IMG/VR virus record: IMGVR_UViG_3300045973_000169
Span: 1 to 64,000 of that record
Direction: 5' to 3' (one strand)
Length of the DNA: 64,000 nt
In this document: in pieces, positions 30,827 through 55,948 of the stretch
Numbering within the stretch: position 1 is the first letter of the stretch
Layout: each line of letters opens with the position of its first letter
Program-made: the position numbers and the translations under genes
The notes under the pieces: model-generated
The model's database searches: none
What the model was told of the DNA's origin: nothing
What the model saw: only the letters and a program-made list of their open reading frames with translations

Positions 30827-30911
30827 GGGGTTGTAGCGGATCGGCCTTCTAAGCCGTGCACATAACACCGTAATGGATCGCATGCTGGTTCGAATCCAGT
30901 CAGCCCCTCCA
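30827..30911 (+). tRNA. Atypical D-armless tRNA-Arg(TCT)-like RNA
   Basis: GGGGTTG/CAGCCCC acceptor stem, CGGC-CTTCTAA-GCCG anticodon arm, GCTGG-TTCGAAT-CCAGT T arm, CCA. No D arm; long variable region. Confidence 0.7.
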
Positions 30912-31398: not shown

Positions 31399-31530
31399 GG
31401 GATTAGTAGAAAATTGGTAAATCGGGGTGAGCCCATGAGGGTAACCTGTCACTGTCTAACAGGGATAAATGAGTAGTTTTAAATAATGAAAATCTATTCG
31501 TTGTAGGTTCGAGTCCTACCTATCTCACCA
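31399..31530 (+). ncRNA. Expanded tRNA-like RNA (Asp GTC-like loop)
   Basis: tRNA-like ends (GGGATTAG...CTATCTC-ACCA), TGGTA D-loop, GTAGG-TTCGAGT-CCTAC T arm. The interior has three hairpins, including CCTGT-CACTGTCTA-ACAGG. Confidence 0.6.
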
Positions 31531-33762: not shown

Positions 33763-33885
33763 AGCGCGATAGGCCAATAGGTAGGCCCCGAGAAATCAAG
33801 TGTCTCTGTATAAGAGAACGTTCGGCAATCAAAACTTTCACTCTTAATGACGAAATTCCAGGTTCGAGTCCTGGTCGCGCTGTCA
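33763..33885 (+). tRNA. tRNA-Lys(CTT)-like RNA with a ~48-nt insert between the D and anticodon arms
   Basis: AGCGCGA/TCGCGCT acceptor, GGCC-AATAGGTA-GGCC D arm, TCA-CTCTTAA-TGA anticodon arm, CCAGG-TTCGAGT-CCTGG T arm; no encoded CCA. Confidence 0.7.
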
Positions 33886-33944
33886 AATTTTAAGATAGCT
33901 TAAACGGTAGAGTATTACAGTTATTAACATGTAAGATACAATAC

Positions 33945-34460
33945 ATGGAGGTAACTGTAATGCCAACTTGCATAAAATGTAATGATGTTTTTCCTGTCTG
34001 GATGTGGATAGATGGAAAAAAGAAAAATTTAAATAATAGAAAATATTGCATTGAATGTTCTCCTTTTGGGTCACGTAATACAAAAAAACTTGAATTAGAA
34101 GATGATTCTCCTTTTAAGATTTGTATTGTTTGTAAAAAGCAATTTGAATATATAAGAGAGAAAGGACATAGAAAAACAAAATGTAATTCTTGCCACACAA
34201 GAGAAAAAAATCAGTCTGTTAAAATAAGAGCGGTTAATTATCTTGGTGGAAAATGTTCTATTTGTGGTTATAAGAAGAACTATAGTGCATTATCTTTTCA
34301 TCATAAAGATATAACACAAAAAGATTTTCCTATAGCTAATAGTAAAGGGTTAAAATGGGAGCTTATGCAAAATGAACTTGATAAGTGTGTTCTACTTTGC
34401 TCTAACTGCCATGCAGAATTACATTATCCAAGTCTTGATGTACAAAGTTATCTGTTTTAA
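33945..34460 (+). CDS. HNH endonuclease (same family as 30912-31253)
   Basis: LGGKCSICGY...FHH...KDF...ELDKCVLLCSNCH. Confidence 0.88.
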   Translation: MEVTVMPTCIKCNDVFPVWMWIDGKKKNLNNRKYCIECSPFGSRNTKKLELEDDSPFKICIVCKKQFEYIREKGHRKTKCNSCHTREKNQSVKIRAVNYLGGKCSICGYKKNYSALSFHHKDITQKDFPIANSKGLKWELMQNELDKCVLLCSNCHAELHYPSLDVQSYLF

Positions 34461-34487
34461 AAATTCAAAACTCAAAAAGGAAAAGAA

Positions 34488-35117
34488 ATGGCAAGAGAAA
34501 TTACAGTTTGTGAGGCGCTAAAAGAGTTGAAGACTCTTGATGCACGTATCAATAAAACAACCAAAGATGCACTGTTTATCACTGTTTCTGTTGGTGGTAA
34601 GTTGCCTGTTGGACAGAAGTCTGAAACTGACTTCGAGACCAAAGCTAAAGGTTCCTTGCAGTCGATCAGAGATCTGATTGCACAACGCAATGAGATTAAA
34701 GCTTCTATCGTTGCTTCTAATGCAGTTACCAATGTTACTGTTGGTAATATTCAGTACACTGTTGCTGGTGTTATTGAGCGTAAGAAGTCAATTGAATACG
34801 AAAAGGAGCTTGTAAAGGCTTTTGGTCTTCAGTTGCTTAAGGCATTACGTGAAATCGAGAATACTAATGCGAGAGCATCACAGGTTCTTGATGGCCATAT
34901 CTCTACTATCCTTGGTAAGGATGCCAAAGAAAAGGGCGGTAAAGAAGTTGATGACTTCACTGCTCAGTTCATGGCAAGGAATGAAGCAAAGGTTGTTGAT
35001 CCGATCAATGTGAAAGAGGAACTTGATAAACTGGATGCTTCAGTTAGAGAGTTCGAAGCAAATGTTGATACAGCTTTATCTATCAGCAATGCTACAACAA
35101 AGATCACTGTGAAATAA
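34488..35117 (+). CDS. Coiled-coil protein, DIP1984/septicolysin-like pattern
   Basis: 'EALKELKTLDARI', 'I..SNA.T.V', C-terminal 'VD.ALS.SNATT.I'. Confidence 0.55.
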   Translation: MAREITVCEALKELKTLDARINKTTKDALFITVSVGGKLPVGQKSETDFETKAKGSLQSIRDLIAQRNEIKASIVASNAVTNVTVGNIQYTVAGVIERKKSIEYEKELVKAFGLQLLKALREIENTNARASQVLDGHISTILGKDAKEKGGKEVDDFTAQFMARNEAKVVDPINVKEELDKLDASVREFEANVDTALSISNATTKITVK

Positions 35118-35123
35118 TAGTTC

Positions 35124-35463
35124 TATCCTTGGCTATACGAAAACGATTAATAAAGATACCTTCTCATAATAGGTTAATTATGAACTTCGACTTGATATCG
35201 GATCATAATTTTGACTGTCTAATACACATGATAAATTATATTTAAGCGCGTAGCGCTCATCTAAAAGCTCAGGTACATCAGGAGTTAGGTTACAAGAATC
35301 ATTTAAACTGCGTAGAAGCCTTTCGTGGGTGGAGCGGGATTCAAGTCTTTTTAGTTCAAGATATAAGACTTATGTTTACATGATTCGATAAAACCCATGA
35401 ATTATTTTATAAGCATTTATCTTTTAAGCTTTTCGTTTGTACATGGCTGTATAGCCAGGGATA
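35124..35463 (+). ncRNA. Putative ~340-nt structured RNA
   Basis: Closing 15-bp helix TATCCTTGGCTATAC/GTATAGCCAGGGATA (one G-U), inner helix GAAAA..TTAATAAAGATA/TATCTTTTAA..TTTTC; ORF-free. Confidence 0.7.
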
Positions 35464-35476
35464 TAATATAAATTTA

Positions 35477-35554
35477 AGACTAGTTTCTGCAAACCACACA
35501 AACATGAGAAGCCCTGAACTGGGCAAAGTGGGGTAGAGGGAGAGAACTAGTCTG
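35477..35554 (+). ncRNA. Stem-C(A/T)GCAA element 1 (in the 5' leader of the DUF2828 gene)
   Basis: TAAG-start, AGACTAGTT/AACTAGTCT stem, CTGCAA, A/C-rich linker, ends CTG. Confidence 0.65.
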
Positions 35555-35600
35555 TTAAAATCAATCTTCCTCTACCTCACCCAAATTAAAGGAGAGAAAA

Positions 35601-36977
35601 ATGGCTGCAAAATATACATTAACAGAAAATGGGGCTAAGACCCTATCCGATAGTGGCAATCCTTTAGTGAATTTGTTTTTTACTATTGGGTCTGCTCGTA
35701 ATAACCCTGAAGTAACAAGAGCTAACTTTAAGAAAGCTTTTGAGTTTGATGCATTGAGAGCTTCTGCTATAGTTCTTTGTGCTCGTGATATTCGTCATAA
35801 TGGTATGGGCGAACGTCAGATCTTTCGTACGCTTCTTAAAGACATGGCTGGTAGTGGTAAGATCTATACTCAGAAGATAGTTGAGCTTATCCCTGAGATT
35901 GGCCGTTTTGATGACCTCAAAGCAGTTGAAGGTACTGTTTATGAGAAGATGGCTATTGATATCTTTGCTAAGGCTATCCGTGAGCGTAATGTTCTTGCTG
36001 CTAAATGGGCAAAGCGTGAAGATAAGAAACTTCAGTTAGCTTTAGGGCTGAATGAAGCTGGACTCCGTAAGCTCTTAGCATCAATTCGCAAAGAGCATAT
36101 CGTTGAGGCCAAGATGTGTCTTAAGGACTGGAAATCTATCGAGTATGGTAAAATTCCTTCAGTTGCTGGTACACGTTATTCAAAAGCATTTCATAAGAAT
36201 GATGGTATTCGTTATCGTGCTTTCATTGATAACCCTGATACTAAGGTGAATGCATCTGCTTCTTTCCCTTATGATGTATATCGTATGTGGAGTAGCAGAA
36301 CTTGTCAGCCTCCTGAGATTAACAAGTATTGGAATAATCTGAAAGAGCTTGAGCTTTCAGGTAGTGTCCTTGCTATTGTTGATACATCAGATTCTATGAC
36401 TTGGTTTAAGGTTGCTGGTAGCCTTGTTCCAAGGGATATTGCTGTATCATTGGGCGTCTACTGTGCTCAGAAGATTGAGGGTAAGTTCAAGAATAATATG
36501 ATGACCTTCAATTCTAACCCTGAGTTCTTTACATTGCCTACAGGTGATGTATGTCAGGCATTTGATAAGGTAATGAGATCCAATATTGGTGGCAGTACTA
36601 ACATTCAGAAAGCTTATGAGAAGATTCTTTCCATGGCTCAGACTGTTAATGCTACTGATAAGGATATGCCTAAGTTCATCCTTATTATATCTGATATGCA
36701 GTTTAATGGCTGCACAGATAGACCTTCTGATACTGTCTATGACAATATGAGAAAGAAATATAAGGCTGCTGGATTCACTATGCCTAAAGTGATATTCTGG
36801 AATATGGATGCTCGTCATGATCAGTATCCTACTGCTTCATTTCAGAAAGAAACTGCTTTAATTAGTGGTTTTAGTCCTAATATTCTCAAGGCAGTTCTTA
36901 AGGGGCAAGATGTTGTTATCACCCCTGAAGGAATAATGAATGAGGCAATTGCTCCATTCATTGAGATGTTAAAATAG
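35601..36977 (+). CDS. DUF2828-family helical + vWA (MIDAS) protein, Ro60/TROVE-like by inference
   Basis: TENGA, RDIR..G.GER..FR, G..DDL, LAAKW..RE, MIDAS DTSDS, ISDMQF, VIFWN, SGFSP. Confidence 0.8.
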   Translation: MAAKYTLTENGAKTLSDSGNPLVNLFFTIGSARNNPEVTRANFKKAFEFDALRASAIVLCARDIRHNGMGERQIFRTLLKDMAGSGKIYTQKIVELIPEIGRFDDLKAVEGTVYEKMAIDIFAKAIRERNVLAAKWAKREDKKLQLALGLNEAGLRKLLASIRKEHIVEAKMCLKDWKSIEYGKIPSVAGTRYSKAFHKNDGIRYRAFIDNPDTKVNASASFPYDVYRMWSSRTCQPPEINKYWNNLKELELSGSVLAIVDTSDSMTWFKVAGSLVPRDIAVSLGVYCAQKIEGKFKNNMMTFNSNPEFFTLPTGDVCQAFDKVMRSNIGGSTNIQKAYEKILSMAQTVNATDKDMPKFILIISDMQFNGCTDRPSDTVYDNMRKKYKAAGFTMPKVIFWNMDARHDQYPTASFQKETALISGFSPNILKAVLKGQDVVITPEGIMNEAIAPFIEMLK

Positions 36978-37173
36978 ACCAGCCGAGCCTATGCTCTACC
37001 TAGTAGGATTCTTTCTGGGATTTGAACCCAGCAGAAGATACAAAGTGATTGAGTAAGCTCAAATAGGATTCATGAAGGTACTGCAGTGCATCATGATTAA
37101 CTGGTTGCGAATTAGTAGAGAGGGACTGTTGCTATTACGATTGAGCTTTACGTGTATAGATGCTTGTCCCTCT
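36978..37173 (+). ncRNA. Multi-hairpin structured RNA
   Basis: ACCAG/CTGGT closing helix with internal hairpins (TCTTTCTGGG/CCCAGCAGAAGA, TTGAG/CTCAA, TCATGA/TCATGA), then an AGAGGGAC/GTCCCTCT hairpin. Confidence 0.45.
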
Positions 37174-37180
37174 AGTTTTT

Positions 37181-37364
37181 GGGCACATGACGAAATGGTA
37201 AACGTGAGAGGAAAGTATATACTTAGTATTTATTTAATAAGTGGATTAATTGCCCATAAGTTAATTATTAGAAAAGTATATGACTACCTCTTGGTGATGA
37301 TGGTGACGGCTAGCCTTTATTATGTCATCTAGCCTTACAGGTTCGAGTCCTGGGGTGCCTACCA
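37181..37364 (+). ncRNA. Expanded tRNA-like RNA (184 nt)
   Basis: GGGCAC/GTGCCT-ACCA acceptor, ACG-AAATGGTAAA-CGT D arm, AGAGG/CCTCT anticodon stem extended by an ~80-nt AT-rich hairpin, long variable arm, CAGG-TTCGAGT-CCTG T arm. Confidence 0.65.
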
Positions 37365-37376
37365 ATAATAAATTTA

Positions 37377-37625
37377 AGAGAGATTACAGCAAACAAAAAC
37401 TTTTTTTAGACAAAAAACGATAGGGTTCGATTCCCCTAAGCCGGGTGGTGGTGAGATTTCTCTCTGTATTAAATTAGTAGATATATAAGGATCCATTCAG
37501 CAACTAAAAACTTTTTTAATTGATAAAAAAACAAAAAGTGATCCTGTCTTAAAGATATATAAGGAAGAGTTCAGCAATCCAAAAAACAATCAAATGCTAA
37601 CTTGAAAATGTTAAAAATCTTCCTG
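37377..37625 (+). repeat. Tandem array of three stem-CAGCAA-anticodon-loop elements (37377-37466, 37488-37546, 37562-37625)
   Basis: Each has TAAG start, a covarying stem (AGAGAGA/TCTCTCT, AGGATC/GATCCT, AGGAAGA/TCTTCCT), CAGCAA, AAAAAC, a small hairpin, and a CTG end. Confidence 0.8.
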
Positions 37626-41671: not shown

Positions 41672-42156
41672 TGAATATAATTCAATCTCCTAAGAATACA
41701 AATGGATATGAAGTATATTCAATGTTTCTTGCTGGTGGTATATCTGGTTGTGATGATTGGCAGAAGTATGTATGTAATCAATTAGTTGAGCTATATAAGC
41801 CAAATGATGAAGTTTATATATTTAATCCTCGTAGAAAAGGCGACTTAACTAAAGAAGGAGCAATGGCTAGGAAACAAATTCTTTGGGAGTATAAGTATTT
41901 ACAATTATGTGATTTTTATGCATTTTGGTTTCCACAAGAAACATTATGTCCAATAACTTTATTTGAATTAGGAAAATACGCTAATTGTAATGCTGTTGTT
42001 GGTATTCATCCTGATTACAAAAGAAGATTTGATCTTGAAATTCAGCTCCCTTTAATAAGTAAAAAGATTAAGATCGTTTATGACCTTGATGAATTTGTTG
42101 AAGCTATTGCAGAAAAAATGTTATTAGAAAGGAAAGATAATGGAGAATGTAATTAG
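41671..42156 (+). CDS. Nucleoside 2-deoxyribosyltransferase-like protein
   Basis: FLAGGI..C.DWQ, FNPRR, QILWE, FWFP.ET.CPITLFELG. Confidence 0.8.
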   Translation: MNIIQSPKNTNGYEVYSMFLAGGISGCDDWQKYVCNQLVELYKPNDEVYIFNPRRKGDLTKEGAMARKQILWEYKYLQLCDFYAFWFPQETLCPITLFELGKYANCNAVVGIHPDYKRRFDLEIQLPLISKKIKIVYDLDEFVEAIAEKMLLERKDNGECN

Positions 42157-42622
42157 ATTTTATGGTAAGAGTAAACCTTTCTTTGAAGGTAGTAACTTTT
42201 ATCCTGCAAAATTTAAAGATAGTGCTGGTACTATATGGGATACAACTGAACATTATTTTCAGGCTATGAAGTTTGAAGCTGGATCTGAAATTCAAATTGG
42301 ACCAGAAAGCTTTATCCCAATTCGTAAGCATATACATGATCAGCCTACTCCTATGAAAGCAGCAAACGAAGGACGTAGGAGAGATTTTCCACTCCGTAGT
42401 GATTGGGAACAAGTAAAAGACCAAATGATGTATAATGCATTACGTTATAAGTTTACACAGAATCCAGTATGTAAACAGGCTCTTCTTGATACTGGTGATG
42501 CTGAGTTAATTGAAGCTTCTCCTGTTGATTATTACTGGGCAGAAGGTGCAGATGGTACAGGCAAGAATATGCTTGGTAAACTGTTAGTTAAATTACGAGA
42601 GGAGATCAGAAATGAACAATAA
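42140..42622 (+). CDS. NADAR (YbiA-like) protein
   Basis: SNFY, TEHYFQAMKF, R.DW..VK..M...L..KF.QN, LIEASP.D.YW, G.N.LG. Confidence 0.9.
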   Translation: MENVIRFYGKSKPFFEGSNFYPAKFKDSAGTIWDTTEHYFQAMKFEAGSEIQIGPESFIPIRKHIHDQPTPMKAANEGRRRDFPLRSDWEQVKDQMMYNALRYKFTQNPVCKQALLDTGDAELIEASPVDYYWAEGADGTGKNMLGKLLVKLREEIRNEQ

Positions 42623-44261
42623 GTTATTAGCTGTATTAGCATGTGATGGATATAAGATTGGTCATAAAGATCAAGATGCTCCTGGCGTTGAAAATAAGTA
42701 TTATACATGGACTCCTCGTTCAAACAAATATCTTCCTGAAGTTGAGAAGGTAGTTGTCTTTGGTGTTCAAGGTTTTATTAAGATTCATCTTCTTCAGTTC
42801 TTCAATGAGAACTTCTTTGAATTAGATAAAGAGTATGTTGTCTTTGAATACAAGCGTATTCTTAAATCATACTTGTTCAAAGAGGAGATTGATACAACTC
42901 ATATTGAGGAACTGCATGACTTAGGTTACTTGCCTTTAAAGATTAAAGCTATTAAAGAAGGGATAAGAGTCCCAATCAGAACTCCTGTTTTAACTGTTGA
43001 GGTTACTAATGGGAAATTTGCATGGTTGGGTGGATATATTGAAGATATTCTTTCTACTTCTCTTTGGCAGCCAATGACTGTTGCTTCTATTGCTTATGAG
43101 TATAAGAAACTCTTTAAAGAGTTTGCAATGGAAACTGTAGGAAATACTGAATTCTGTAAGTTCCAAGGTCATGACTTTAGTTATCGTGGCTTGATGGCTG
43201 GTCTTGATGCTATTCAGGCTTCAGGTTCAGCTTGGTTACCTTTGTTTGTTGGAACAGATAATATTCCATCTATTCCTTATATGGAAAATGTCTATGGAGC
43301 TGATAGCTCTAAAGAGATTATTGGGTGTAGTGTACCTGCTTCTGAACACAGTGTAGCTGAGACCTATATGGAATTTGATGATGATGGCAATCTTATCCCT
43401 GGTTGGGAAGATGAATATCTCCGTAGATTGATTGTTGATATTTATCCTACTGGGATTGTTTCAATTGTAGCAGATACAATTGATCTCTTTGAGCTTATTA
43501 CTGTTAAGTTAGTTGCTCTTAAAGAAATCATTATGGCTCGTGATGGTAAGACTGTCATTCGTCCTGATAGTGGCAACCCTGCTGATATCCTTTGTGGATA
43601 TGTTATTAAGAAATTAAATAACCCACTTAATGGTGATGCTGATAAGTACTATCTTCCTTTTGATCGTTGGACTGATGATGGATTTAATGCTTACCAGACT
43701 ACTGATGGAAAAGTTTATAACTTTGATCATAAAGAATTATCTATTGCTGAAACTAAAGGTGTAGTTGAACTTCTTTGGGAGATCTTTGGTGGAACTATCA
43801 ATGCCAAAGGATACAAAGAATTAGACTCACACATTGGTACTATCTATGGTGATTCTATTACTATTTCTTTAGCTAGAGAGATCTGTAAAAGACTTAAAGC
43901 TAAAGGCTTTGCTAGTACTAACTGGGTTGCTGGTGTTGGTAGTTACAGCTTGTTAGGACAGTTAAGTCGTGATAGTCTTGGATTTGCACTTAAAGAGACC
44001 TCTATTACTAGAAATGGTAAAGAGATAGCTGTCTTTAAGGATCCTAAGACTGATGATGGAACTAAGAAATCAGCTAAAGGACGTGTAGTAGTTGTACCTT
44101 CTCCTATTGGTGATGGTTCAATGCGTACTATTGATAACCTTACCAAAGAACAGGAAGAAAAGGTTGGAGCTTTCAACTTACTCCAGACTGTATTTGAAGA
44201 TGGTGTATTGCCTGCAGAAACAACATTAGCAGATATTCGTATTTGTTTAGGTGGAATTTAA
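42612..44261 (+). CDS. Nicotinamide phosphoribosyltransferase-like (probable Namat, NARP1)
   Basis: DGYK.GH, HDFSYRG, SVPASEHSV, SIVADT, IRPDSG, IYGDSIT, KDPKTD...KKSAKG. Confidence 0.9.
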   Translation: MNNKLLAVLACDGYKIGHKDQDAPGVENKYYTWTPRSNKYLPEVEKVVVFGVQGFIKIHLLQFFNENFFELDKEYVVFEYKRILKSYLFKEEIDTTHIEELHDLGYLPLKIKAIKEGIRVPIRTPVLTVEVTNGKFAWLGGYIEDILSTSLWQPMTVASIAYEYKKLFKEFAMETVGNTEFCKFQGHDFSYRGLMAGLDAIQASGSAWLPLFVGTDNIPSIPYMENVYGADSSKEIIGCSVPASEHSVAETYMEFDDDGNLIPGWEDEYLRRLIVDIYPTGIVSIVADTIDLFELITVKLVALKEIIMARDGKTVIRPDSGNPADILCGYVIKKLNNPLNGDADKYYLPFDRWTDDGFNAYQTTDGKVYNFDHKELSIAETKGVVELLWEIFGGTINAKGYKELDSHIGTIYGDSITISLAREICKRLKAKGFASTNWVAGVGSYSLLGQLSRDSLGFALKETSITRNGKEIAVFKDPKTDDGTKKSAKGRVVVVPSPIGDGSMRTIDNLTKEQEEKVGAFNLLQTVFEDGVLPAETTLADIRICLGGI

Positions 44262-46671: not shown

Positions 46672-47172
46672 ATGAATTTAATATTAAAAGCATTAAGATT
46701 TGCAGAAAATAAACATAAAGGACAGACACGTAAGGTTACTGGAGAAGAGTATTTTGTACATCCTTTAATGGTAAGTTATATTGTAGCTAACTATAAGATG
46801 TCTCAGAACTTAGAGATACTTATTGTAGCTGCTATCTTGCATGATACAGTTGAAGATACAGATACTACTTTTGAAGAGATACTTAAAGAGTTTGGTATGT
46901 TTGTAGCTACATTAGTATTTGAACTTACAGATGATAAGGCTAAGAAAAGGAAGTTAGGAAACTTAGAGTATTGTAAATTGAGATGGTGTGGTCTATCTAA
47001 CTATGCTTTATATCTTAAACTATGTGATAGACTTTACAATATGTCTGATCATCCTACTAAAGAACAACAAGATACTACACTTCTTATACTTGATCATGTT
47101 GAGAGTAAACGTAAATTAACATTATCTCAACAGCGTGTTGTATTTGAAATAAGAAAGGTGATAAATGGTTAA
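46672..47172 (+). CDS. HD-domain RelA/SpoT-type (p)ppGpp hydrolase-like (Mesh1/SAH)
   Basis: FA..KHKGQTRK..Y..HP..V, AAILHDTVEDT, LTDDK, KLCDR..N. Confidence 0.85.
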   Translation: MNLILKALRFAENKHKGQTRKVTGEEYFVHPLMVSYIVANYKMSQNLEILIVAAILHDTVEDTDTTFEEILKEFGMFVATLVFELTDDKAKKRKLGNLEYCKLRWCGLSNYALYLKLCDRLYNMSDHPTKEQQDTTLLILDHVESKRKLTLSQQRVVFEIRKVING

Positions 47173-47701
47173 AGATATTTATGTATTAGTTGGAGCTGCT
47201 GCTCACGGTAAGAGTACATGGGCTGGAAGTAAGACAACTGAATATTTTGCTAAGTGGATGGATGAAAGATCTAAAAATCCAAGTCAAACTGGATCTTATG
47301 GATATGTAAATGCTGATATGATTAGGAAGCAGCTTTATGGTGATCCTACTATCCAAGGTGATGGCAATGAAGTATTTGGTAAAGTGTTTGAAGCTTATAC
47401 TGGGTTCTTAAGAAACAAGGCAGTTGATTTAATTATTGTAGACAATACATCTCTTAAAGTTAGAGATAGAAAAAGATATTATACATTGGCTCAAACTATA
47501 TGTGAAGCTATGGGTTATGCTTTTAATTATCACCTTGTATTTTTCCCACCTCATTTTGAGAGAGCTTTAGTTTGGAATAAGCAAAGGAATCGTCAGGTTC
47601 CAGAAGATGTTATTGCAAGACATTGTGCTGTATATCAAGGACCAAGTGAATTTGAAAGAGAAAATTGTATAATCGAGACTGTTATACACAAAGAAAGGTA
47701 A
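47165..47701 (+). CDS. Polynucleotide kinase-like P-loop protein (AAA_33)
   Basis: GAAAHGKST, DMIR, VDNT, RxRxVP. Confidence 0.8.
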   Translation: MVKDIYVLVGAAAHGKSTWAGSKTTEYFAKWMDERSKNPSQTGSYGYVNADMIRKQLYGDPTIQGDGNEVFGKVFEAYTGFLRNKAVDLIIVDNTSLKVRDRKRYYTLAQTICEAMGYAFNYHLVFFPPHFERALVWNKQRNRQVPEDVIARHCAVYQGPSEFERENCIIETVIHKER

Positions 47702-49349
47702 AAAATGGGTGAGTATAAGACAGAGAAAATTGTATCATTGAATACTCCAGGCTTTACTAGTATCCATGGTAATTGGAGATCTAGACCTAAGAATGGACGT
47801 TTATTTAATGAAGATGAAATTCGCTTGATTAGAGTCCAAGAAGGATCTCTTCGGCATTTAGCTGAAATCCATGGATGTAGTCAAGTCTTAATTCGCAATA
47901 TTAAAAAAAGATGCATCTATGAAGATGTAATTTAAGAGGAGAAATGAAATGAAAAATATTATGATTCAACCGATTAACCGGTTTAAGAAGATTCTTGTTG
48001 GTGATGACTGTGGCGAAGTATTCGACCCTACACAGGGCAAATTTCTTACTGGGTGTACCGAGAGTTACATCTTTCAGAAAGAACGCTGTGGTGAGCTTGT
48101 AGCTTACAAAGAAGAAGGTTCTGATGCAGTGTATGTTGGCTTTGCTATTATGCATAAAGAAGATATGAAGAAAGGTTATGCTAAAGCAACTACTCGTGAG
48201 AAAGCTTTCCTTGTAGCTGATAAATCTTATCATGCTGACTTCTATACTAATAAGAATGGGGTTGTAGGTGTTCCTCATCTTATTCGTGATAATGTCTATT
48301 ACTTCGCTAAACGTATTGAGCGTTATTTCAAAGGTTGTACTGTCCCATTTTGGGTTAATGAAATTGTTGCTCATTACGAAGCATAGTAGTCAATAGTTAA
48401 AGCTTACTGTAGGTGAACCTACTAGCTGGTGGGCTGTGTAAGTTGTCTGTTTATAGCAGAGCAAACCTATTTATTAAGGAGTATATATGTTTGAAATAAT
48501 TGGTATTATGTTATGTATTCTTGCTATTTTACATATGCAATATCCTCACAAAACAAAATTTTACATAGAACGTATTATGATTTTATTTAACTACTGCCCT
48601 AACTGTAAAAAGTTTTCAATGTATACAATAAAGAATTATAAGGTATGTTCTAGTTGTCGTAAACGGTAATACTATGTCTGGTGTATTATGTAAAGATAAA
48701 TCAGATAAGAAGTATGCGATGTTTAGACATTCAGTAAAGAATCTTCGTATTAGATATGGTATTAGAGCTGATGAAGAATTGTATTTTAAATTATGTAAGT
48801 ATATTAAAAATGCTAAAGGAAACACAGAGTTTACTCATCCTGATGGGACAAGAGTTGTCTTTGTTGACAAGCAATCGTGTACTCGATCTGTATGGCGTAT
48901 ATACTTCAAAGATAAATGTATAATTGCTGCTTATGATAAGACAAGACATATATTATGTACTGTCTTACCTGCTAATCTTAAAGATGAAGATATAATTTAT
49001 AAACGATGGTTAGAAGAAGAATAATCTTATAAACAACGGAGAGTATATGTTAAAGGCAAGAAAAGTTTATTTAGTTAAAATAGCTCCTGCTAATCTTAAT
49101 AAATTTATTTCTTTCTCATCTAATTTTATTCCTACTTTAGATGAGATAAAAGATATAATCGAAAATTTACATGAAGAGAATCCTTTACCATTTGATTTGA
49201 TATATGAATGTCATTGTGGATTAGATATTTGGGGAGTCCCTTCTGAATGTAATGGAAAGACTATCCGTTGGTGGAAAAATAAAGGTGAAGCTGTTTCAAG
49301 AGGATTCATCTCAATAAAAGAACAAAATATTTATTTTAAGTAGGTAGTA

Positions 49350-49928
49350 ATGAAGAATAAAAGAGTTTGTGTAGATTTAGATAATACACTATGTGATTTA
49401 ACTGGTTATGTTTGTGATGAAATTAATTTAGGATTAGGATTAGCTGATCCGGTATTTAATCAACGTATTGAAACATATAATTATCTACAAAATACTTATG
49501 GAGCTTGGATAGAAGAATTTTGGACTACTCCTGGAATTTATGATAAACATATTAAACCATTAGAAGGTTCAATAGAATTTATTAGAGAACTTATCGCTAT
49601 AGTAGGTAGATTCAATGTATCTATTGTAACAGCGACTCCAAAAGGGCTTGAAGAAGAAAAGAAACAATTTTGTTTCAAGAACTATGGGATTAGTAATGTT
49701 ATATGTACCCATGAGAAATGGAAGCATACTAAAGGAGCTATTCTTATAGATGATTATTGGAAACATTGTATGGATCATTTATTACAGAATGATGATCCTT
49801 GTATTTTGTTTAACTATGAAAATGATTATCCTTATGCTGATGCTAAGTATATTACTTTCCCAATAACCAATAAGTTACATAGAGCTGATTCTTATAAGAA
49901 AGTATTAGAGATTATAAAGGAGAAATAA
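49350..49928 (+). CDS. 5'(3')-deoxyribonucleotidase (HAD)
   Basis: VDLDNTL, IVTA, K...ILIDD. Confidence 0.82.
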   Translation: MKNKRVCVDLDNTLCDLTGYVCDEINLGLGLADPVFNQRIETYNYLQNTYGAWIEEFWTTPGIYDKHIKPLEGSIEFIRELIAIVGRFNVSIVTATPKGLEEEKKQFCFKNYGISNVICTHEKWKHTKGAILIDDYWKHCMDHLLQNDDPCILFNYENDYPYADAKYITFPITNKLHRADSYKKVLEIIKEK

Positions 49929-49929
49929 C

Positions 49930-50652
49930 ATGGCACGTTATGCTATAAGTGACATACATGGTTGTTTAAGAACCTTTAAGAAAGTGTTACGTTCAGTTGA
50001 CTTTAATAAGAGCGATACGCTTATATTACTAGGTGATTATATTGATAGAGGGTTAGACTCTAAAGGTGTTATTCAATACATTATTGATCTTATTGCAGAA
50101 GGCTATGATGTTATTCCTTTGTGTGGGAATCATGAACAATTCCTTATAGAGTCTATTGGTAATAATGCAGTTCAAACTATGTGGGAACGTAATGGTGGAG
50201 ATAAATGCCTTAGAAGTTATGGTGTTAATCATCCTAGTTTAATGCCACATGAACATATAAGTTTTATAAGATCTTTACCTCTTATGCATGTTGAAAGAGA
50301 TTATGTCTTTGTTCATGCAGGGTTAGATTTCTGTAAAGAAGATCCTATTGAAGAATCAAGTGATGAGACTATTCTTTGGAGTAGGATGCATCGCCTTGCT
50401 GGAGATTCACGTAGGAAGAAACTTGGTGGAAGAGTCTTGGTTACAGGACATACTCCTACAGATAAGAAAACAATGATTACAATGGCTATGGGTGAAGATA
50501 TGATTACTATTGACAGAGGCTGTGTCTTTGAAGGATCTAATTATAACCATATGGCTATTTTTAATCTAGATACAAAACAGTTTAATTTTATTAAAAATAT
50601 TGATACTTTAGAAAATGATTGGGTGAGTAGACATGGATATGCAGGACGATAG
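49930..50652 (+). CDS. Ser/Thr protein phosphatase family metallophosphoesterase
   Basis: SDIHG, LGDYIDRG, GNHE, FVHAG, GHTP, ID.GC. Confidence 0.9.
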   Translation: MARYAISDIHGCLRTFKKVLRSVDFNKSDTLILLGDYIDRGLDSKGVIQYIIDLIAEGYDVIPLCGNHEQFLIESIGNNAVQTMWERNGGDKCLRSYGVNHPSLMPHEHISFIRSLPLMHVERDYVFVHAGLDFCKEDPIEESSDETILWSRMHRLAGDSRRKKLGGRVLVTGHTPTDKKTMITMAMGEDMITIDRGCVFEGSNYNHMAIFNLDTKQFNFIKNIDTLENDWVSRHGYAGR

Positions 50653-51070
50653 GCTTTTAGTTCATATGAATTATAGAAAATATACACCTGAAAACATTGT
50701 CAGTCTAGAGCCAAATGAAGTGTTTGTCTTCGGTAGCAATACCGAAGGCATTCACGGAGCTGGTGCTGCTAGAGCTGCATTGGATTTGTTTGGTGCTAAG
50801 TTTGGACAAGCAGAAGGATTACAAGGTCAGTCTTATGCTATTGTAACTAAAGATCTTGAATTAGGTATGAGGAGTATCCCTCTTGGAGATATATGTAAAA
50901 GTATATTTAAATTCCTTGAGTTTGCTAAAGAGAATGGAGATAAAATTTTTTATGTAACTAAATTAGGTTGCGCTTTAGCTGGATATTCTATTGATGAAAT
51001 AGGTAAGCTTTTTATGGGATTTAATATTCCGAATAATGTTGTTTTACCAGTTGAATTTTGGGAGTGTTAG
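50633..51070 (+). CDS. Macro-domain-like protein (A1S_2505-type)
   Basis: VFVFGSN..G.HGAGAA, GLQGQSYAI.T, VT.LGC.LAG. Confidence 0.75.
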   Translation: MDMQDDRLLVHMNYRKYTPENIVSLEPNEVFVFGSNTEGIHGAGAARAALDLFGAKFGQAEGLQGQSYAIVTKDLELGMRSIPLGDICKSIFKFLEFAKENGDKIFYVTKLGCALAGYSIDEIGKLFMGFNIPNNVVLPVEFWEC

Positions 51071-51429
51071 AATGAAAGTTGAAATTATTCACGAAGAAGT
51101 AAAGCCAGTTATCCCGCCAGTTAAAGAAGTAGTTATTACTCTTACAGCGAAAGAAGCTTTAATCCTTAAGGTTTTAATGGGACATATAGCTGGAGTTAGT
51201 GGTGGACATGAGCTGAGTATTTTTAGAGATAAAATCTGGGAATCTTTAAGTAAAGATTTACCTGGGATTTATTCTGATAAATTTAAAGCAGTTGAAAATG
51301 AATGTAAAAATGTTAAATTAGCATTTTAGTATAAGGAGTAAATATGTATCAAGCTGTAAGCATATAAATGCAAATGTAGCTATCTGCATTAATGTGTTAT
51401 TAACATCTATCAAAACTAAGGAGTCTCAA

Positions 51430-52167
51430 ATGATAGGTGAAAAGTTTGGTAAGTTAACAGTTGTCTATTTCAATGATTTAAATAAGAGAAAAGAGAAACT
51501 ATGGTTATGTCTTTGTGATTGTGGAAAAGAAATAATTGTAAAAACAAGAAATCTTAAAATTGGAGCAACAAAAAGTTGTGGTTGTTTATCAACAGGCCCA
51601 AAAATTTCTGATCTTACTGGGAATAAATTTGGTGATTTAGAAGTTATATCTTATGCACATCAAGATAAATGGAGAACAAGTTTTTGGAATTGTAGATGTA
51701 TTTGTGGTAATTATACTGTTGCTAGTTCCGCAAATCTTAAATCTGGAAATCGTATTTCTTGTGGATGTAAACATGATGAATGGAAACATAATAAACCAAA
51801 AGGTCAAGATAGTCCACATTGGAATTCAGATATAATTGATAGAAATAGCAGACGACTTGACTATGAAGCAAAAGACTGGGCAATAAGAATTAAAGAACGT
51901 GATAAATATAAGTGTTTAGTTTGTGGTAAATCTCCAAGTGGAGAACTAACAAGTCATCATCTATATAGCTATAATGACTATATAGATTTAAGATATGATA
52001 TTGATAATGGAATTACTTTATGCGAGCAATGTCATTATTCTTTCCATAAAAAATATGGATTCAAAAAGAACACAAAAGAACAATTTAAGGAGTGGAAAAA
52101 TGAGTTATATGGCAGTAATAGCACGGTTGAAGAATGTCCGTGCTCATCCGAATGCAGACCGGATTAA
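51430..52167 (+). CDS. HNH homing endonuclease (paralog of 8141-8854)
   Basis: WLCLCDCG..KSCGC and WNCRCICG..SCGC; RDKYKCLVCG..SHH..NGITLCEQCH. Confidence 0.88.
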   Translation: MIGEKFGKLTVVYFNDLNKRKEKLWLCLCDCGKEIIVKTRNLKIGATKSCGCLSTGPKISDLTGNKFGDLEVISYAHQDKWRTSFWNCRCICGNYTVASSANLKSGNRISCGCKHDEWKHNKPKGQDSPHWNSDIIDRNSRRLDYEAKDWAIRIKERDKYKCLVCGKSPSGELTSHHLYSYNDYIDLRYDIDNGITLCEQCHYSFHKKYGFKKNTKEQFKEWKNELYGSNSTVEECPCSSECRPD

Positions 52168-53470
52168 ATTAGCTAATTGTTTAGGCTATCAAGTTATTGT
52201 AGGGCTTGAGGCTAAAGATGATGATATTGTTATTTTATTTCCTGATGATGGGCAATTAAGTCATGAATATATTTTTAATAATAACCTATATAACAAAGCA
52301 GAGATGAATAAAGATCCTAGTGTTAAAACTGGATTCTTTGATCATAAACGTAGAGTAAGATGTCAGACATTTAGAGGAGAGAAAAGTGAAGCTTATACTG
52401 CTGATATCAGAAGCGTGGAATTTACTGGGGTTGATATTGAAAGTCTCTATGTGGGTGTCCGTTTTGATGTTCTTAATGATATTAGCATTTGCAATAAGTA
52501 TATAACTCAAGCCACTAAGGATGCTGCTAATAAGAATGGGAATAAAGATAAGGTTAAACTTAATGTTATTCTTAAGAAAATGTTCCCTGAGCATATAGAT
52601 ACTGAACAGATTAGATTTGCAAGAGATGAAGATCTAATTGGATTAGTTACTATTACTCATAAGCTTCATGGTACAAGTGCTAGAACTGGATATATTAATA
52701 CTCCTGTTGAAGTACCTTTAAAATGGTATCATAAACTTTGGAATCAGTATGTTAAGTTAGTTGACTATCTCCCTCCTAAGTATACTCACGAGCAGAATGA
52801 AGCTTTATATTTTGCTCCTACTACTATCAAGAAATGGAAAACTATTTTTGGTACACGTAGGGTAATTAAAGGTCCTGTTAATGAAGAAGCAACTGATTAT
52901 CGTTCTTTATGTGCTAAACGATTAGCTCCTTTTATTGAAAAGGGTGAAATCTGGTATTATGAAATTGTAGGGTATGAAGATACTGGTGCTCTTATTATGG
53001 GGAGTGTTTCTACTAAAGAAATGCCTAAAGAATTCCAAAAAAGGTTTGGTGAAACTATTACTTACAAGTATGGTTGCTTACCTGGGACATGGAATATTTA
53101 TGTTTATCGTATTACTCATCAGAATGAAGATGGTGTTATCTATGAACTTCCATGGGCACAAGTAAAAGCTAAATGTAATAATGCTGCTATTAAGCATGTT
53201 CCTGAAATTGATGTTATTTTAACAGAAGTAGCTTTAGATGGTACAATTGATGTTGAAGTTTTAAAGCAAACAATTGAACATTACACTGAAGATGAAGATA
53301 TTGCTGAACCCCTTGATGCTTCTCATATACGTGAAGGTATCTGTGTTAGGATTGATAATCTTGAGACTGGTAAAATGAAAATATTCAAGAATAAAACTTT
53401 TGTATTTAAGGTGCTTGAAGGTATTGTTAAGGATTCTGGTGTAGTTGATACAGAAGAAGCTGAAGGGTAG
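52100..53470 (+). CDS. RNA ligase, Rnl2/DRB0094-like, with N-terminal tRNA-binding OB-like domain
   Basis: HPNADR, motif I KLHGTS, YEIVG, REGICV, K.K.F.F; AAGGAG SD before ATG 52100. Confidence 0.85.
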   Translation: MSYMAVIARLKNVRAHPNADRIKLANCLGYQVIVGLEAKDDDIVILFPDDGQLSHEYIFNNNLYNKAEMNKDPSVKTGFFDHKRRVRCQTFRGEKSEAYTADIRSVEFTGVDIESLYVGVRFDVLNDISICNKYITQATKDAANKNGNKDKVKLNVILKKMFPEHIDTEQIRFARDEDLIGLVTITHKLHGTSARTGYINTPVEVPLKWYHKLWNQYVKLVDYLPPKYTHEQNEALYFAPTTIKKWKTIFGTRRVIKGPVNEEATDYRSLCAKRLAPFIEKGEIWYYEIVGYEDTGALIMGSVSTKEMPKEFQKRFGETITYKYGCLPGTWNIYVYRITHQNEDGVIYELPWAQVKAKCNNAAIKHVPEIDVILTEVALDGTIDVEVLKQTIEHYTEDEDIAEPLDASHIREGICVRIDNLETGKMKIFKNKTFVFKVLEGIVKDSGVVDTEEAEG

Positions 53471-54715: not shown

Positions 54716-54827
54716 TGTCAAACTTTGCTAATTATTTGGTTTTACTTGGTATTATTCTTGGAGCATTCCCTGGATATTGGATTGGTAAAAAAGTAGGAAA
54801 ATTACAAGCTAAGAAAGAGGATACGAA

Positions 54828-55232: not shown

Positions 55233-55233
55233 G

Positions 55234-55947: not shown

Positions 55948-55948
55948 A

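What the first reader, a model, noticed from the sequence alone, without database searches (positions are those of the whole stretch)
33763..37625. Candidate new phage RNP system: Ro60-like DUF2828 protein plus an array of Y-RNA-like stem-CAGCAA-anticodon RNAs
Seen: four elements flank the DUF2828/vWA gene (35477-35554 upstream; 37377-37466, 37488-37546, 37562-37625 downstream). All share one grammar: TAAG start, a terminal stem whose sequence differs between copies but always pairs (covariation), C(A/T)GCAA, A-rich AAAC, a small hairpin, then stem' ending in CTG. The inner loops of the three downstream copies read like anticodon loops (T-TAG-AC, T-GAT-AA, T-GCT-AA), and copy 2 carries a GGG-TTCGATT-CCC T arm. 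Known: bacterial Ro60 (TROVE+vWA) binds the terminal stem of Y RNAs, and YrlA Y RNAs carry a tRNA-like domain. Inference: this helical+MIDAS protein is a Ro60 analogue whose cognate RNAs use a different (CAGCAA) signature. It may present anticodon-loop mimics as decoys for host anticodon nucleases, or scaffold tRNA repair with the ligase/PNK/CCA genes downstream.
Basis: partly seen in the sequence, partly recalled or inferred. Interest (0 to 1): 0.92.

Follow-up and report, generated by a model that had tools for sequence, protein, structure and literature searches.

The report
Phage Ro60-like protein with partner RNAs
A large phage encodes a ring-shaped RNA-binding protein of the Ro60 type next to a previously undescribed, widespread family of small RNAs that share one "handle" and carry imitation pieces of tRNA; the handle closely resembles that of the enigmatic Class I RNAs of social amoebae.

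Summary
Four elements (35478-35554, 37378-37466, 37489-37546, 37563-37625; a fifth lies at genome 90994-91059) share this grammar: A|G start, a 5-8 bp covarying terminal stem, C(A/T)GCAA, an A-rich tract, stem', C-UG(U).

A covariance model of the RNA finds 114 matches in 80 viral loci that hold homologues of the protein, all on the gene's strand. It finds 38 more in 80 prokaryotic-assembly loci. It also hits cultured Felix-O1-like, Listeria, Campylobacter and Pseudomonas phages. It finds nothing in T5, which has 25 tRNAs and no DUF7788.

A search starting from the RNA motif alone finds the gene in 34 of 80 loci, always on the same strand.

The RNAs occupy tRNA "slots" in tRNA arrays or abut the gene's ribosome-binding site. 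Their variable cores mimic anticodon arms, T arms or whole permuted tRNAs.

The best reading is a Ro60/Y-RNA-type particle devoted to tRNA-centred conflict. Binding, transcripts and function are untested.

The protein is already annotated "Ro-like RNA-binding"; the RNA family appears new. Only Rfam's Dictyostelium Class I RNA matches it full length, below threshold.

The parts
35478..35554 (+). Element A. A handle RNA of the CTGCAA variant with an 8-bp terminal stem GACTAGTT/AACTAGTC. It lies in the 5' leader of the Ro-like gene, 46 nt before the ATG.
   Evidence: Read directly from the sequence. R1 scores it 24.6 bits, E 2e-3, and it was not in the training set. The closest relative with DNA (L289, protein 57% identical) has the same leader element with compensatory stem changes, GACAGGTT/AACCTGTC. 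The terminal stem is in the MFE structure.
35601..36977 (+). Gene for a 458-aa DUF2828/DUF7788 protein. The model is a Ro60-like helical-repeat ring plus a vWA domain with MIDAS residues D261, S263, S265, T333 and D365.
37378..37466 (+). Element B. A longer handle RNA (CAGCAA) carrying a U/A hairpin and a T-arm mimic (GGG TTCGATT CCC, 37423-37435). It starts 12 nt after a tRNA-like 3' end (...GGTGCCTACCA).
   Evidence: Read from the sequence. R1 scores it 36.8 bits, E 2e-6, and it was not in the training set. The T arm matches part of the tmRNA/tRNA model. RF01414 scores it 18 bits.
37489..37546 (+). Element C. A short handle RNA (58 nt) with stem GGATC/GATCC, CAGCAA and a U6/A6 hairpin.
   Evidence: R1 54.8 bits. 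It gives a full-length match to Rfam Dicty_Class_I_RNA at 25.8 bits, below the gathering score of 41.5.
37563..37625 (+). Element D. A short handle RNA (63 nt) with stem GGAAGA/TCTTCC and CAGCAA.
   Evidence: R1 54.0 bits. RF01414 13.7 bits, full length.
35438..35467 (+). Best sigma-70-like promoter match (TGTACA-18-TATAAT), 11 nt upstream of element A's first G. It could drive A plus the gene.
   Evidence: Consensus scan, 10 of 12 matches. The number of such sites in the region is not above shuffles, so this is weak.
33763..33886 (+). Unconventional tRNA-like sequence. It has an acceptor stem, D arm, an extra hairpin, a weak anticodon arm and the T arm CCAGG-TTCGAGT-CCTGG. It is part of the degenerate tRNA-like cluster around the gene. 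It has no CAGCAA handle.
   Evidence: The fold shows a cloverleaf plus an extra arm. ARAGORN and the Rfam tRNA model do not call it. Whether it belongs to the system is not shown.
37181..37365 (+). Second unconventional tRNA-like sequence, with a long insertion, the T arm CAGG-TTCGAGT-CCTG and a 3' end GGTGCCT-A-CCA. It lies directly upstream of element B.
   Evidence: Read from the sequence. ARAGORN does not call it. Whether it belongs to the system is not shown.

Best explanation
The locus encodes a second lineage of Ro60/Y-RNA-type ribonucleoprotein. The protein is a Ro60-fold ring with a MIDAS-bearing vWA domain.

**The RNAs.** They are small, modular and made in several copies. All share a constant 'handle' and differ in a variable core.
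- The handle is a 5' G-started 6-8 bp terminal stem with an invariant closing pair, then a single-stranded (U)(U/A)CAGCAA right after the 5' strand, an A-rich tract before the 3' strand, and a 3' C-UG(U) tail.
- The core imitates tRNA parts: an anticodon stem-loop alone (short forms, about 50-65 nt), a T arm, or a whole circularly permuted tRNA (long forms, 90-150 nt), much as bacterial YrlA does.

**Shown.**
- The Ro60 fold of the model.
- The RNA grammar and its covariation.
- The two-way genomic linkage with strict strand agreement.
- Placement in tRNA slots: 6-7 nt after one tRNA and 8-11 nt before the next.
- Placement 12-29 nt in front of the gene's ATG in half of the loci that have an upstream element.

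**Inferred.**
1. The RNAs are co-transcribed with tRNA arrays or the gene's mRNA and are released by the tRNA-processing enzymes.
2. The handle docks on the Ro-like ring, as Y-RNA stems dock on Ro60.
3. Where the last element abuts the Shine-Dalgarno sequence, protein binding there also feeds back on translation.
4. The particle presents tRNA look-alikes to tRNA-directed enzymes during infection.

My preferred version of step 4 is a stable bait or sponge for host anticodon-loop nucleases and other tRNA-targeting defences, possibly coupled to surveillance and repair of cleaved tRNAs threaded into the ring. The main alternative for step 4 is a Y-RNA-like tether that recruits repair or decay enzymes.
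For: **Fold**
- Foldseek's top 8 PDB hits are all Ro60/TROVE.
- Mouse Ro60 gives E 2.8e-8, TM 0.67.
- The MIDAS residues are invariant.

**RNA**
- Grammar scan of 80 viral loci: 139 hits on the gene strand against 8 on the other.
- R1 finds 114 hits at E <= 0.01 in 53 of 80 viral loci, all on the gene strand.
- R1 finds 38 hits, all on the + strand, in 80 independent prokaryote-assembly loci whose proteins are 30-37% identical.
- The stem is 99.1% paired, and all 6 pairs show compensatory changes. The covariation score is 1.01 against 0.26 for shuffles (0 of 500 as high); slid registers pair at 32-51%. RNAalifold finds the same stem independently.

**Linkage**
- In five whole phage records, 22 of 24 hits lie within about 13 kb upstream of the gene on its strand.
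- A motif-first scan recovers the gene in 34 of 80 loci, 34 of 34 on the same strand and 33 of 34 upstream.
- The three complete or large motif-bearing records that lacked the gene in the fetched stretch have it elsewhere.
- Elements occur in cultured phages of unrelated families: Felixounavirus CL1, Listeria LMSP-25, Campylobacter CP8 and Pseudomonas Milchi.
- Negative control: T5 has 25 tRNAs and no DUF7788, and its best R1 hit is 13.6 bits.

**tRNA mimicry and context**
- 26 of 58 short forms have a U33/R37 7-nt loop on a 5-bp stem, against 0.6 expected. Long forms are permuted tRNA-likes.
- Spacing to tRNAs and to the ATG is as stated above.
- RNA-repair genes lie within 4 kb in 22 of 160 loci and 10-22 kb downstream here.

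**Precedent**
- Ro60 with adjacent tRNA-like Y RNAs is known in bacteria and phages (PMC4201824, PMC12135203).
Against: - No transcript, end-mapping or binding data exist. No RNA run was listed.
- About a third of the viral DUF2828 loci, and Vibrio phage nt-1, show no R1 hit within 4-5 kb of the gene. Mycobacteriophage Faith1 gives only weak hits.
- Sequence-level homology to TROVE is marginal (E 0.09), and Pfam TROVE is not hit.
- Co-location could partly reflect shared residence in tRNA arrays.
- The anticodon-arm stems are generic A/U-rich helices, not copies of the phage's own tRNAs. The window's own short copies lack a canonical anticodon loop.
- No conserved protein partner lies next to the gene.
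- The choice between decoy and tether rests on inference only.
Confidence: 0.6

Rival explanations
1. The elements are generic furniture of phage tRNA arrays: punctuation or processing signals, or stable by-products like the 'stable RNAs of unknown function' in the T4 and T5 tRNA clusters. They have no dependence on the DUF2828 protein. The linkage arises only because the gene also tends to sit in tRNA arrays.
For: The elements occupy tRNA slots with tRNA-like spacing. DUF2828 genes are embedded in big tRNA arrays. T5 carries annotated stable and tRNA-like RNAs among its tRNAs. The fifth copy lies 54 kb from the gene, beside a tRNA.
Against: T5's complete tRNA region has no R1 hit (best 13.6 bits), and T5 has no DUF7788. 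In Listeria LMSP-25, Campylobacter CP8 and 21 of 41 metagenomic loci the last element directly abuts the gene's Shine-Dalgarno sequence. The same handle is kept across phage families that share little else but the protein. All three complete or large motif-bearing genomes checked encode the protein. This rests on a single negative control genome.
Confidence: 0.12
2. The elements are chiefly cis-regulatory. They act as an autoregulatory operator or leader for the DUF2828 mRNA (translational feedback or a processing site), and the extra copies titrate the protein. There is no trans-acting particle with a function of its own.
For: In 21 of 41 loci the element ends 12-29 nt before the ATG, with only the ribosome-binding site between. 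In the window, element A can swap its terminal stem for a 16-bp helix with the leader (MFE -40.7 kcal/mol, z -4.0). A leader element with compensatory stem changes is present in the closest relative.
Against: Most copies lie between tRNAs, or downstream of or far from the gene. There are up to 6 copies per genome with elaborate tRNA-like cores, which an operator would not need. The alternative leader helix is not evidently conserved in L289.
Confidence: 0.1
3. The long forms are circularly permuted or otherwise unconventional tRNA genes, or decaying tRNA pseudogenes. The terminal stem serves as a processing or circularisation helix that is removed to yield working tRNAs. The short forms are their remnants.
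For: Long forms carry, in order, an anticodon arm, T arm, closed acceptor-like hairpin and D arm. The window has several tRNA-like sequences that tRNA finders miss. RtcB-type ligases lie near some loci.
Against: The most conserved part is the handle, not the tRNA-like core. Short forms with only an anticodon-arm mimic are the commonest class and keep the full handle. The acceptor-like hairpin is closed by about 4 nt. Bacteria lack the bulge-helix-bulge splicing machinery used by known permuted tRNAs (general knowledge). YrlA has the same layout and is not matured into tRNA (PMC4201824).
Confidence: 0.05
4. The same particle exists, but it works as a classical Y-RNA tether or gate rather than a bait. 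The tRNA-like core recruits an exonuclease or repair enzyme (PNPase, RtcB, kinase/ligase) to damaged tRNAs or rRNAs held in the ring, as in the Rsr-YrlA-PNPase and rsr-yrlA-rtcBA systems.
For: The Ro60 fold. RtcB or Rnl genes lie within 4 kb in 19 of 160 loci, and repair genes are present in this genome. Precedents exist in PMC4201824, PMC7790460 and PMC12135203. The mycobacteriophage LeBron encodes the Ro-like protein together with an RNA ligase and a polynucleotide kinase.
Against: A single effector would not call for many different anticodon-loop sequences per genome. No conserved neighbouring effector gene was found. Most loci have no repair gene within 4 kb.
Confidence: 0.25

Closest known systems
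Bacterial and phage Ro60 (Rsr, TROVE) with Y RNAs, especially YrlA (Chen et al. 2014, PMC4201824; Thermus phage phiLo Ro60-Yrl1/2, PMC12135203)
   Different: The protein belongs to another sequence family: DUF2828/DUF7788, with no Pfam TROVE hit and profile E 0.09 to phiLo TROVE. The RNA signature differs: single-stranded CAGCAA next to the 5' strand and a C-UG(U) end, instead of the Ro-binding bulged helix and the GNCGAAN0-1G motif. No Rfam Y-RNA family is hit. Many copies are minimal anticodon-arm-only RNAs, and they sit inside tRNA arrays.
Dictyostelid Class I RNAs (Rfam RF01414; Kjellin et al. 2021, PMC7919456)
   Same: Length 42-65 nt. Start AAG, with G opening a ~6-bp 5'/3' stem that varies by compensatory changes. 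A conserved motif ending CAGCAA lies directly after the 5' strand (Dictyostelium CCUUACAGCAA; phage (G/U)U(U/A)CAGCAA, and some copies read CTTACAGCAA). The middle is variable and A/U-rich, with an A-run before the 3' strand. The end is CUGU, with the C pairing to the first G. It is the only Rfam family that matches the phage RNAs full length.
   Different: Scores are 12-30.5 bits, below the gathering score of 41.5. There is no DUSE promoter. The host domain is different, and the family is described as unique to Dictyostelia. The known direct binder there is the RRM protein Rnp1A, not a Ro-like protein. The phage family also has long tRNA-like forms. Whether dictyostelids encode DUF2828 could not be checked here.
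Stable small RNAs of unknown function in the T4 and T5 tRNA clusters
   Same: Non-tRNA small RNAs interleaved with phage tRNA genes and presumably released by tRNA-processing enzymes. Some are annotated as tRNA-like.
   Different: T5 gives no match to the handle model and has no DUF7788 gene. T4 was not tested here.
Phage strategies against tRNA-targeting defences (nuclease-resistant phage tRNAs, PMC10264068; the phage tRNA that neutralises PARIS, PMC11455837; T4 Pnkp/Rnl1 repair of PrrC damage)
   Same: The same battlefield: large phage tRNA arrays, anticodon loops as the contested target, and repair enzymes encoded in the same genomes.
   Different: Those use working tRNAs or enzymes. Here the anticodon arms are mounted on a non-tRNA handle tied to a Ro-like protein. 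No functional evidence exists yet.

Membership tests
Ro60 / TROVE proteins | Toroidal helical-repeat (HEAT-like) domain followed by a vWA domain, the fold of 1YVP/1YVR/2NVO | tested here: met
Ro60 / TROVE proteins | Sequence membership in the TROVE domain family (Pfam PF05731) | tested here: not met
   Pfam reports only DUF7788, DUF2828 and a weak VWA_2. The family profile against PDB sequences gives E 0.09 to phiLo TROVE, around the MIDAS only.
Ro60 / TROVE proteins | MIDAS motif (DxSxS...T...D) in the vWA domain | tested here: met
   D261, S263, S265, T333 and D365 are invariant in 36 homologues.
Ro60 / TROVE proteins | Binds Y RNA stems on the outer surface and single-stranded RNA ends in the central hole | not testable with these tools
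   This needs EMSA, CLIP or a structure. Only genomic linkage is available.
YrlA-type bacterial Y RNAs | Encoded next to the Ro-type gene, with 5' and 3' ends paired in a terminal stem | tested here: met
YrlA-type bacterial Y RNAs | tRNA-like domain with T and D arms and the GNCGAAN0-1G motif in every member | tested here: not met
   Only some long forms have T and D arms. Short forms carry only an anticodon-arm mimic. No Y-RNA family appears in the Rfam scan down to E 10.
Dictyostelid Class I RNA (RF01414) | Short 5'/3' stem, AAG start, 11-nt motif ending CAGCAA beside the 5' strand, CUGU end, 42-65 nt | tested here: met
   Logos of 108 elements and alignment A2, compared with the features stated in PMC7919456. 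Only 6-9 of the 11 motif positions are shared.
Dictyostelid Class I RNA (RF01414) | Score at or above Rfam's gathering threshold (41.5 bits) | tested here: not met
   The best phage element scores 30.5 bits. The window's copies score 25.8, 18 and 13.7 bits.
Dictyostelid Class I RNA (RF01414) | DUSE promoter element about 60 nt upstream; dictyostelid host | tested here: not met
   The elements follow tRNAs by 6-7 nt or other elements by 8-22 nt in phage genomes. A eukaryotic promoter is not applicable.
tRNA | Recognised by tRNA models, with an open acceptor stem and a free 3' end | tested here: not met
   ARAGORN and Rfam tRNA do not call any of the elements. In long forms the acceptor-like helix is closed by a loop.

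The most novel reading that the evidence does not exclude
The phage handle RNAs and the dictyostelid Class I RNAs would be one ancient RNA class: the cognate ligands of DUF2828/DUF7788 Ro-like proteins. That protein family is spread over phages, giant viruses and many eukaryotes. Class I RNAs, so far thought unique to social amoebae and of unknown mechanism, would then be the 'Y RNAs' of a second Ro lineage. Eukaryotic DUF2828 proteins (plants, fungi, protists) would have undiscovered CAGCAA-type RNA partners.
Probability: 0.25. Interest if true: 0.95.

Novelty: new variant of a known kind. Interest (0 to 1): 0.85.

Why it matters
**A named partner for a common phage gene.** The gene occurs in 711 cultured phage records. 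These include Felix-O1-like coliphages and Salmonella phages, the Listeria, Staphylococcus and Enterococcus phage groups used in therapy and biocontrol, and Campylobacter and Vibrio phages. The finding gives it a concrete RNA partner and a testable role.

**A new RNA class.** It adds a large, modular class to the short list of protein-tethered tRNA mimics. It also suggests that phage tRNA arrays hold more than tRNAs: baits or adaptors in the fight over anticodon loops.

**A ready experimental handle.** The stem-CAGCAA-CUG handle is compact and conserved. It could be used to find the RNAs in any genome and to purify the particle.

**The amoeba link.** If the resemblance to dictyostelid Class I RNAs reflects a shared protein partner, a 20-year-old question becomes directly testable: what do those abundant developmental RNAs bind, and what do they do? 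DUF2828 proteins of plants and fungi would also gain a first functional lead.

Tried and rejected
- **DNA and single-protein searches.** Megablast of the locus against cultured phages gave no match. The single-protein locus search found nothing until an alignment was used.
- **Rfam.** At gathering thresholds it gave only tRNAs. No Y-RNA family was hit down to E 10.
- **Thermodynamic folding.** Single copies are not informative for the short A/U-rich RNAs (z -0.6 to -1.2).
- **Inner hairpin.** RNAalifold on the MAFFT alignment recovers the terminal stem but not the inner hairpin, because the cores are misaligned. The anticodon-arm claim therefore rests on a hairpin scan with shuffles.
- **Copies of the phage's own tRNA anticodon arms.** Rejected. 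Identity is 6-14 of 17, and only 9 of 25 have a tRNA with the same triplet in the locus.
- **Promoter or terminator explanation.** Rejected. The stem strands are 40-130 nt apart and covary, and promoter-like sites are not enriched.
- **Transposon-like terminal inverted repeats.** Rejected, because the arms covary rather than being conserved, and the strand bias is absolute.
- **A conserved neighbouring protein partner.** None was found.
- **Transcript evidence.** One DNA run (pond metagenome) was listed and no RNA run.
- **Whether dictyostelids encode DUF2828.** AlphaFold-cluster rows came without organisms. Atlas taxa list only phyla such as Mucoromycota and Haptophyta. Paper and supplement searches found nothing. 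Avesson et al. 2011 is not held.

Full report
**1. What is in the sequence**

The window is the first 64 kb of a complete 206,638-bp, 33.8% G+C virus record from IMG/VR.

ORF 35601-36977 (+) encodes a 458-aa protein with Pfam DUF7788 (1.6e-39), DUF2828 (3.5e-18) and a weak VWA_2 hit.

Each has the following parts:
- It starts (T)AA|G.
- It opens with a 5-8 bp stem whose sequence differs between copies but always pairs with the 3' end.
- After 0-4 nt comes CTGCAA (A) or CAGCAA (B-D).
- An A/U-rich core follows.
- It ends stem'-C, TG, T.

A grammar scan of the whole genome gave 8 hits on the + strand and none on the - strand. Five of them are intergenic with the same flanks: the four above plus a fifth at 90994-91059, 9 nt after tRNA-Leu in the main tRNA array at 86-91 kb.

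**2. The protein is a Ro60-fold protein**

An AlphaFold2 model built on 36 homologues is confident (pLDDT 87, pTM 0.85).
- Foldseek against the PDB puts only Ro60 structures (1yvr, 2i91, 1yvp, 9nfa and others) and the Thermus phage phiLo TROVE protein (9kop) at the top. E-values run from 1e-8 to 2e-6 and TM from 0.56 to 0.68 over the full length.
- Reviewed mouse Ro60 gives E 2.8e-8 and TM 0.67.
- The MIDAS residues D261, S263, S265, T333 and D365 are invariant.

By sequence the tie is marginal. The family profile hits phiLo TROVE at E 0.09 only, and Pfam TROVE is not hit.

The Ro likeness is already in annotation. PHROG 850 is named 'RNA-binding protein'. RefSeq names homologues 'RNA-binding protein', and cluster-L mycobacteriophage records say 'Ro-like RNA binding protein'. 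LeBron gp53 of this kind is moderately cytotoxic when overexpressed. I found no paper on its RNA partner.

**3. The RNA family is real and tied to the gene**

From 80 viral loci with a homologue on the + strand, the grammar scan gave 139 hits on the gene strand against 8 on the other, in 660 kb. Of 108 stricter hits, 57 end within 500 nt upstream of the gene and 14 start within 500 nt downstream. Four stricter hits fall on the minus strand.

The logos show features that the scan did not require:
- U-rich TTTTA before the G.
- Stem positions 2, 3, 5 and 6 that change in step on both strands.
- T at stem position 4 in 101 of 108.
- (G/T)T(T/A) before CAGCAA.
- TT after CTG.

I built a covariance model (R1) from 52 short forms with only the 6-bp stem as structure.
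- It recovers the untrained copies B (36.8 bits) and A (24.6 bits) and nothing else in the window.
- It finds 114 matches at E <= 0.01 in 53 of the 80 viral loci, every one on the gene strand.
- It finds 38 matches, again all on the gene strand, in 80 further loci from prokaryotic assemblies whose proteins are only 30-37% identical.
- On 39 matches, mostly outside the training set, the stem is 99.1% paired. All six pairs show compensatory changes. The covariation score is 1.01 against 0.26 for shuffles (0 of 500), and slid registers pair at 32-51%. That alignment is fitted to the model, which favours the stem.
- RNAalifold on the MAFFT alignment predicts the same stem by itself, plus a possible A-U pair outside it.

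**4. Linkage tested both ways, with a control**

- In five whole phage records, 22 of 24 matches lie within about 13 kb upstream of the gene on its strand.
- Starting from the RNA alone, I scanned the viral collection with a 19-nt degenerate pattern holding 14 fixed bases and using no protein information. The held stretch contains a DUF2828 gene in 34 of 80 loci. All 34 are on the motif's strand, and in 33 the motif is upstream.
- Ten loci without the gene were checked as whole records. The two complete genomes and one 165-kb fragment all encode DUF7788 elsewhere. The other seven are fragments of 10-40 kb, estimated 3-84% complete.
- Phage T5 has 25 tRNAs, several annotated stable RNAs and no DUF7788 anywhere. 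It gives no match better than 13.6 bits across its whole tRNA region.

**5. Cultured phages**

Homologues of the protein occur in 711 cultured phage records. Handle RNAs are found as follows:
- E. coli Felixounavirus CL1: three, between tRNAs right after the gene.
- Listeria phage LMSP-25: three in tandem just upstream, with an RtcB ligase gene 1.3 kb downstream.
- Campylobacter phage CP8: two just upstream.
- Pseudomonas phage Milchi: four in its tRNA array, of the CAGCAC variant.
- Mycobacteriophage Faith1: only weak hits. Vibrio phage nt-1: none.

**6. Anatomy and placement**

Lengths fall into two groups, short forms of about 50-65 nt and long forms of 80-150 nt.
- Of 58 short forms, 32 contain a 5-bp/7-nt-loop hairpin against 3.9 in shuffles. 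Of these, 26 have U at loop position 2 and a purine at position 6, like U33/R37 of anticodon loops, against 0.6 in shuffles. The central triplets are diverse.
- Their stems are generic A/U helices, not copies of the phage's own tRNAs.
- Long forms carry T arms (GGTTCGAnnCC). In clear cases the order is anticodon arm, T arm, closed acceptor-like hairpin, D arm. That is a circularly permuted tRNA, as in YrlA. Another recurring subclass has a GTGAGTTTCGAATTCTCAC hairpin.
- The window's own B carries a T arm. C and D have only imperfect hairpins. The fifth copy has a canonical loop.
- Elements sit 6-7 nt after a tRNA (18 cases) and 8-11 nt before the next (16 cases).
- In 21 of 41 loci the last element ends 12-29 nt before the ATG, with only AAAGGA-type ribosome-binding sites between.
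- In the window, A ends 46 nt before the ATG. It can trade its terminal stem for a 16-bp helix with the leader (MFE -40.7 kcal/mol, z -4.0).
- The nearest relative with DNA keeps a leader element with compensatory stem changes.

**7. Context**

The gene in this genome is surrounded by tRNA-like sequences that tRNA finders miss.

Downstream in the window lie these genes:

| Gene | Start |
|---|---|
| AAA_33 kinase | 47165 |
| Metallophosphoesterase | 49930 |
| RNA ligase | 51995 |
| CCA-adding enzyme | 55949 |
| RlaP nucleotidyltransferase | 57919 |

Across 160 loci, 22 have RtcB, Rnl, CCA-adding or RlaP genes within 4 kb.

**8. Mechanism**

Shown:
- the fold of the model;
- the RNA grammar and its covariation;
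- the reciprocal, strand-specific linkage;
- the placement in tRNA slots and in the gene's leader;
- the tRNA mimicry.

Inferred:
- co-transcription with tRNAs or the mRNA, and release by tRNA-processing enzymes;
- docking of the handle on the Ro-like ring, as Y-RNA stems dock on Ro60;
- feedback on translation where the handle abuts the ribosome-binding site;
- presentation of tRNA look-alikes to tRNA-directed enzymes.

I favour a protected bait for anticodon-loop nucleases, because each genome carries several different anticodon-loop mimics. A Y-RNA-like tether for repair or decay enzymes is nearly as likely.

Rivals were weighed and found less likely: array furniture unrelated to the protein, a purely cis-acting operator, and permuted tRNA genes. 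The reasons are given under each rival. No transcript or binding data could be obtained.

**9. The amoeba resemblance**

In an Rfam scan with relaxed thresholds, the only family matching these RNAs end to end is Dicty_Class_I_RNA. Copy C scores 25.8 bits, and the best relative scores 30.5 bits with E 5.5e-6 per record. All are below the gathering score of 41.5.

The published definition of Class I RNAs matches the phage handle point by point:
- 42-65 nt long;
- AAG start;
- a ~6-bp end-to-end stem kept by compensatory changes;
- an 11-nt motif (CCUUACAGCAA in the Rfam consensus) right after the 5' strand;
- a variable middle;
- a CUGU end whose C pairs with the first G.

That paper reports no Class I RNA outside Dictyostelia, and the RRM protein Rnp1A as the direct binder. 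DUF2828 proteins occur in eukaryotes and giant viruses as well as phages. I could not find out whether dictyostelids have one. I therefore report a strong resemblance, not membership.

**10. Verdict**

The core of the interpretation, a Ro60-like protein with its own class of Y-like RNAs, is well supported by comparative evidence. Binding and function are untested. The protein's Ro likeness is already annotated, while the RNA family, its modular tRNA mimicry and its Class I-like handle appear undescribed. I rate it a new variant of a known kind, of high interest.

Noticed in passing
window 30827-30908, ~31399-31530, 33763-33886, ~37181-37365: Four tRNA-like sequences with good T arms (GGTTCGAGTCC / GGTTCGAATCC) and paired ends, but with insertions of 20-100 nt. 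ARAGORN calls none of them, and Rfam's tRNA model calls only the first (33 bits). Two end in ...ACCA. They could be intron-bearing or otherwise unconventional tRNAs, or further tRNA-mimic RNAs without the CAGCAA handle.
   Followed up: partly
window 35528-35543 with 35565-35582: A G-rich stretch inside element A is complementary to a C/U-rich stretch of the mRNA leader. The 16-bp helix (MFE -40.7 kcal/mol, z -4.0) excludes A's terminal stem, which makes it a possible switch in the leader of the Ro-like gene. It is not obviously conserved in the closest relative (L289).
   Followed up: partly
genome 90994-91059 (outside the window; L002:1501-1566): A fifth handle RNA, 9 nt after tRNA-Leu(UAG) in the main array of 17 tRNAs at 86.2-91.3 kb. 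It has a canonical anticodon-loop mimic (TTTGA-CTTTAAC-TCAAA, central triplet TTA).
   Followed up: yes
window 47165-59061: A set of RNA-repair-type genes: AAA_33 kinase, metallophosphoesterase, RNA ligase (weak Pfam hit, 2e-5), CCA-adding enzyme with an HD domain, and RlaP nucleotidyltransferase. NAD-salvage genes (NADAR, NAPRTase) lie at 42140-44261.
   Followed up: partly
window 63161-63925: An ORF with a reverse-transcriptase domain (RVT_1, 1e-21) near the end of the window. Its kind (retron, DGR, group II intron) was not examined.
   Followed up: no
L038 3712-3808, L039 2993-3120, L062 3689-3801, L064 3750-3881, L065 5393-5495, L066 3726-3873, L086 1678-1789 and others: A recurring long-form subclass. 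Its core ends with a hairpin close to GTGAGTTTCGAATTCTCAC, followed by AAAAAGTAGAAAAC before the 3' strand of the handle. It usually sits as the second-last element before the gene.
   Followed up: no
L296 (phage T5, record 28-41 kb): T5's tRNA array carries eight annotated 'stable RNAs with unknown functions', some called tRNA-like. They do not match the handle model, and T5 has no DUF7788. This may be an analogous but separate solution.
   Followed up: partly
window 33945-34460 and 34488-35117: Between the upstream tRNA-like sequence and element A lie an HNH endonuclease gene (phrog_2255, 7e-40) and a gene matching phrog_1491 'tail fiber protein' (1e-58). The second is an odd neighbour in this region.
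   Followed up: no
L294 8295-8827 (Pseudomonas phage Milchi): In this phage the handle motif reads CAGCAC instead of CAGCAA in all four copies. Leader copies in several loci read CTGCAA or CCGCAA. The invariant core is therefore C-N-GCA.
   Followed up: partly
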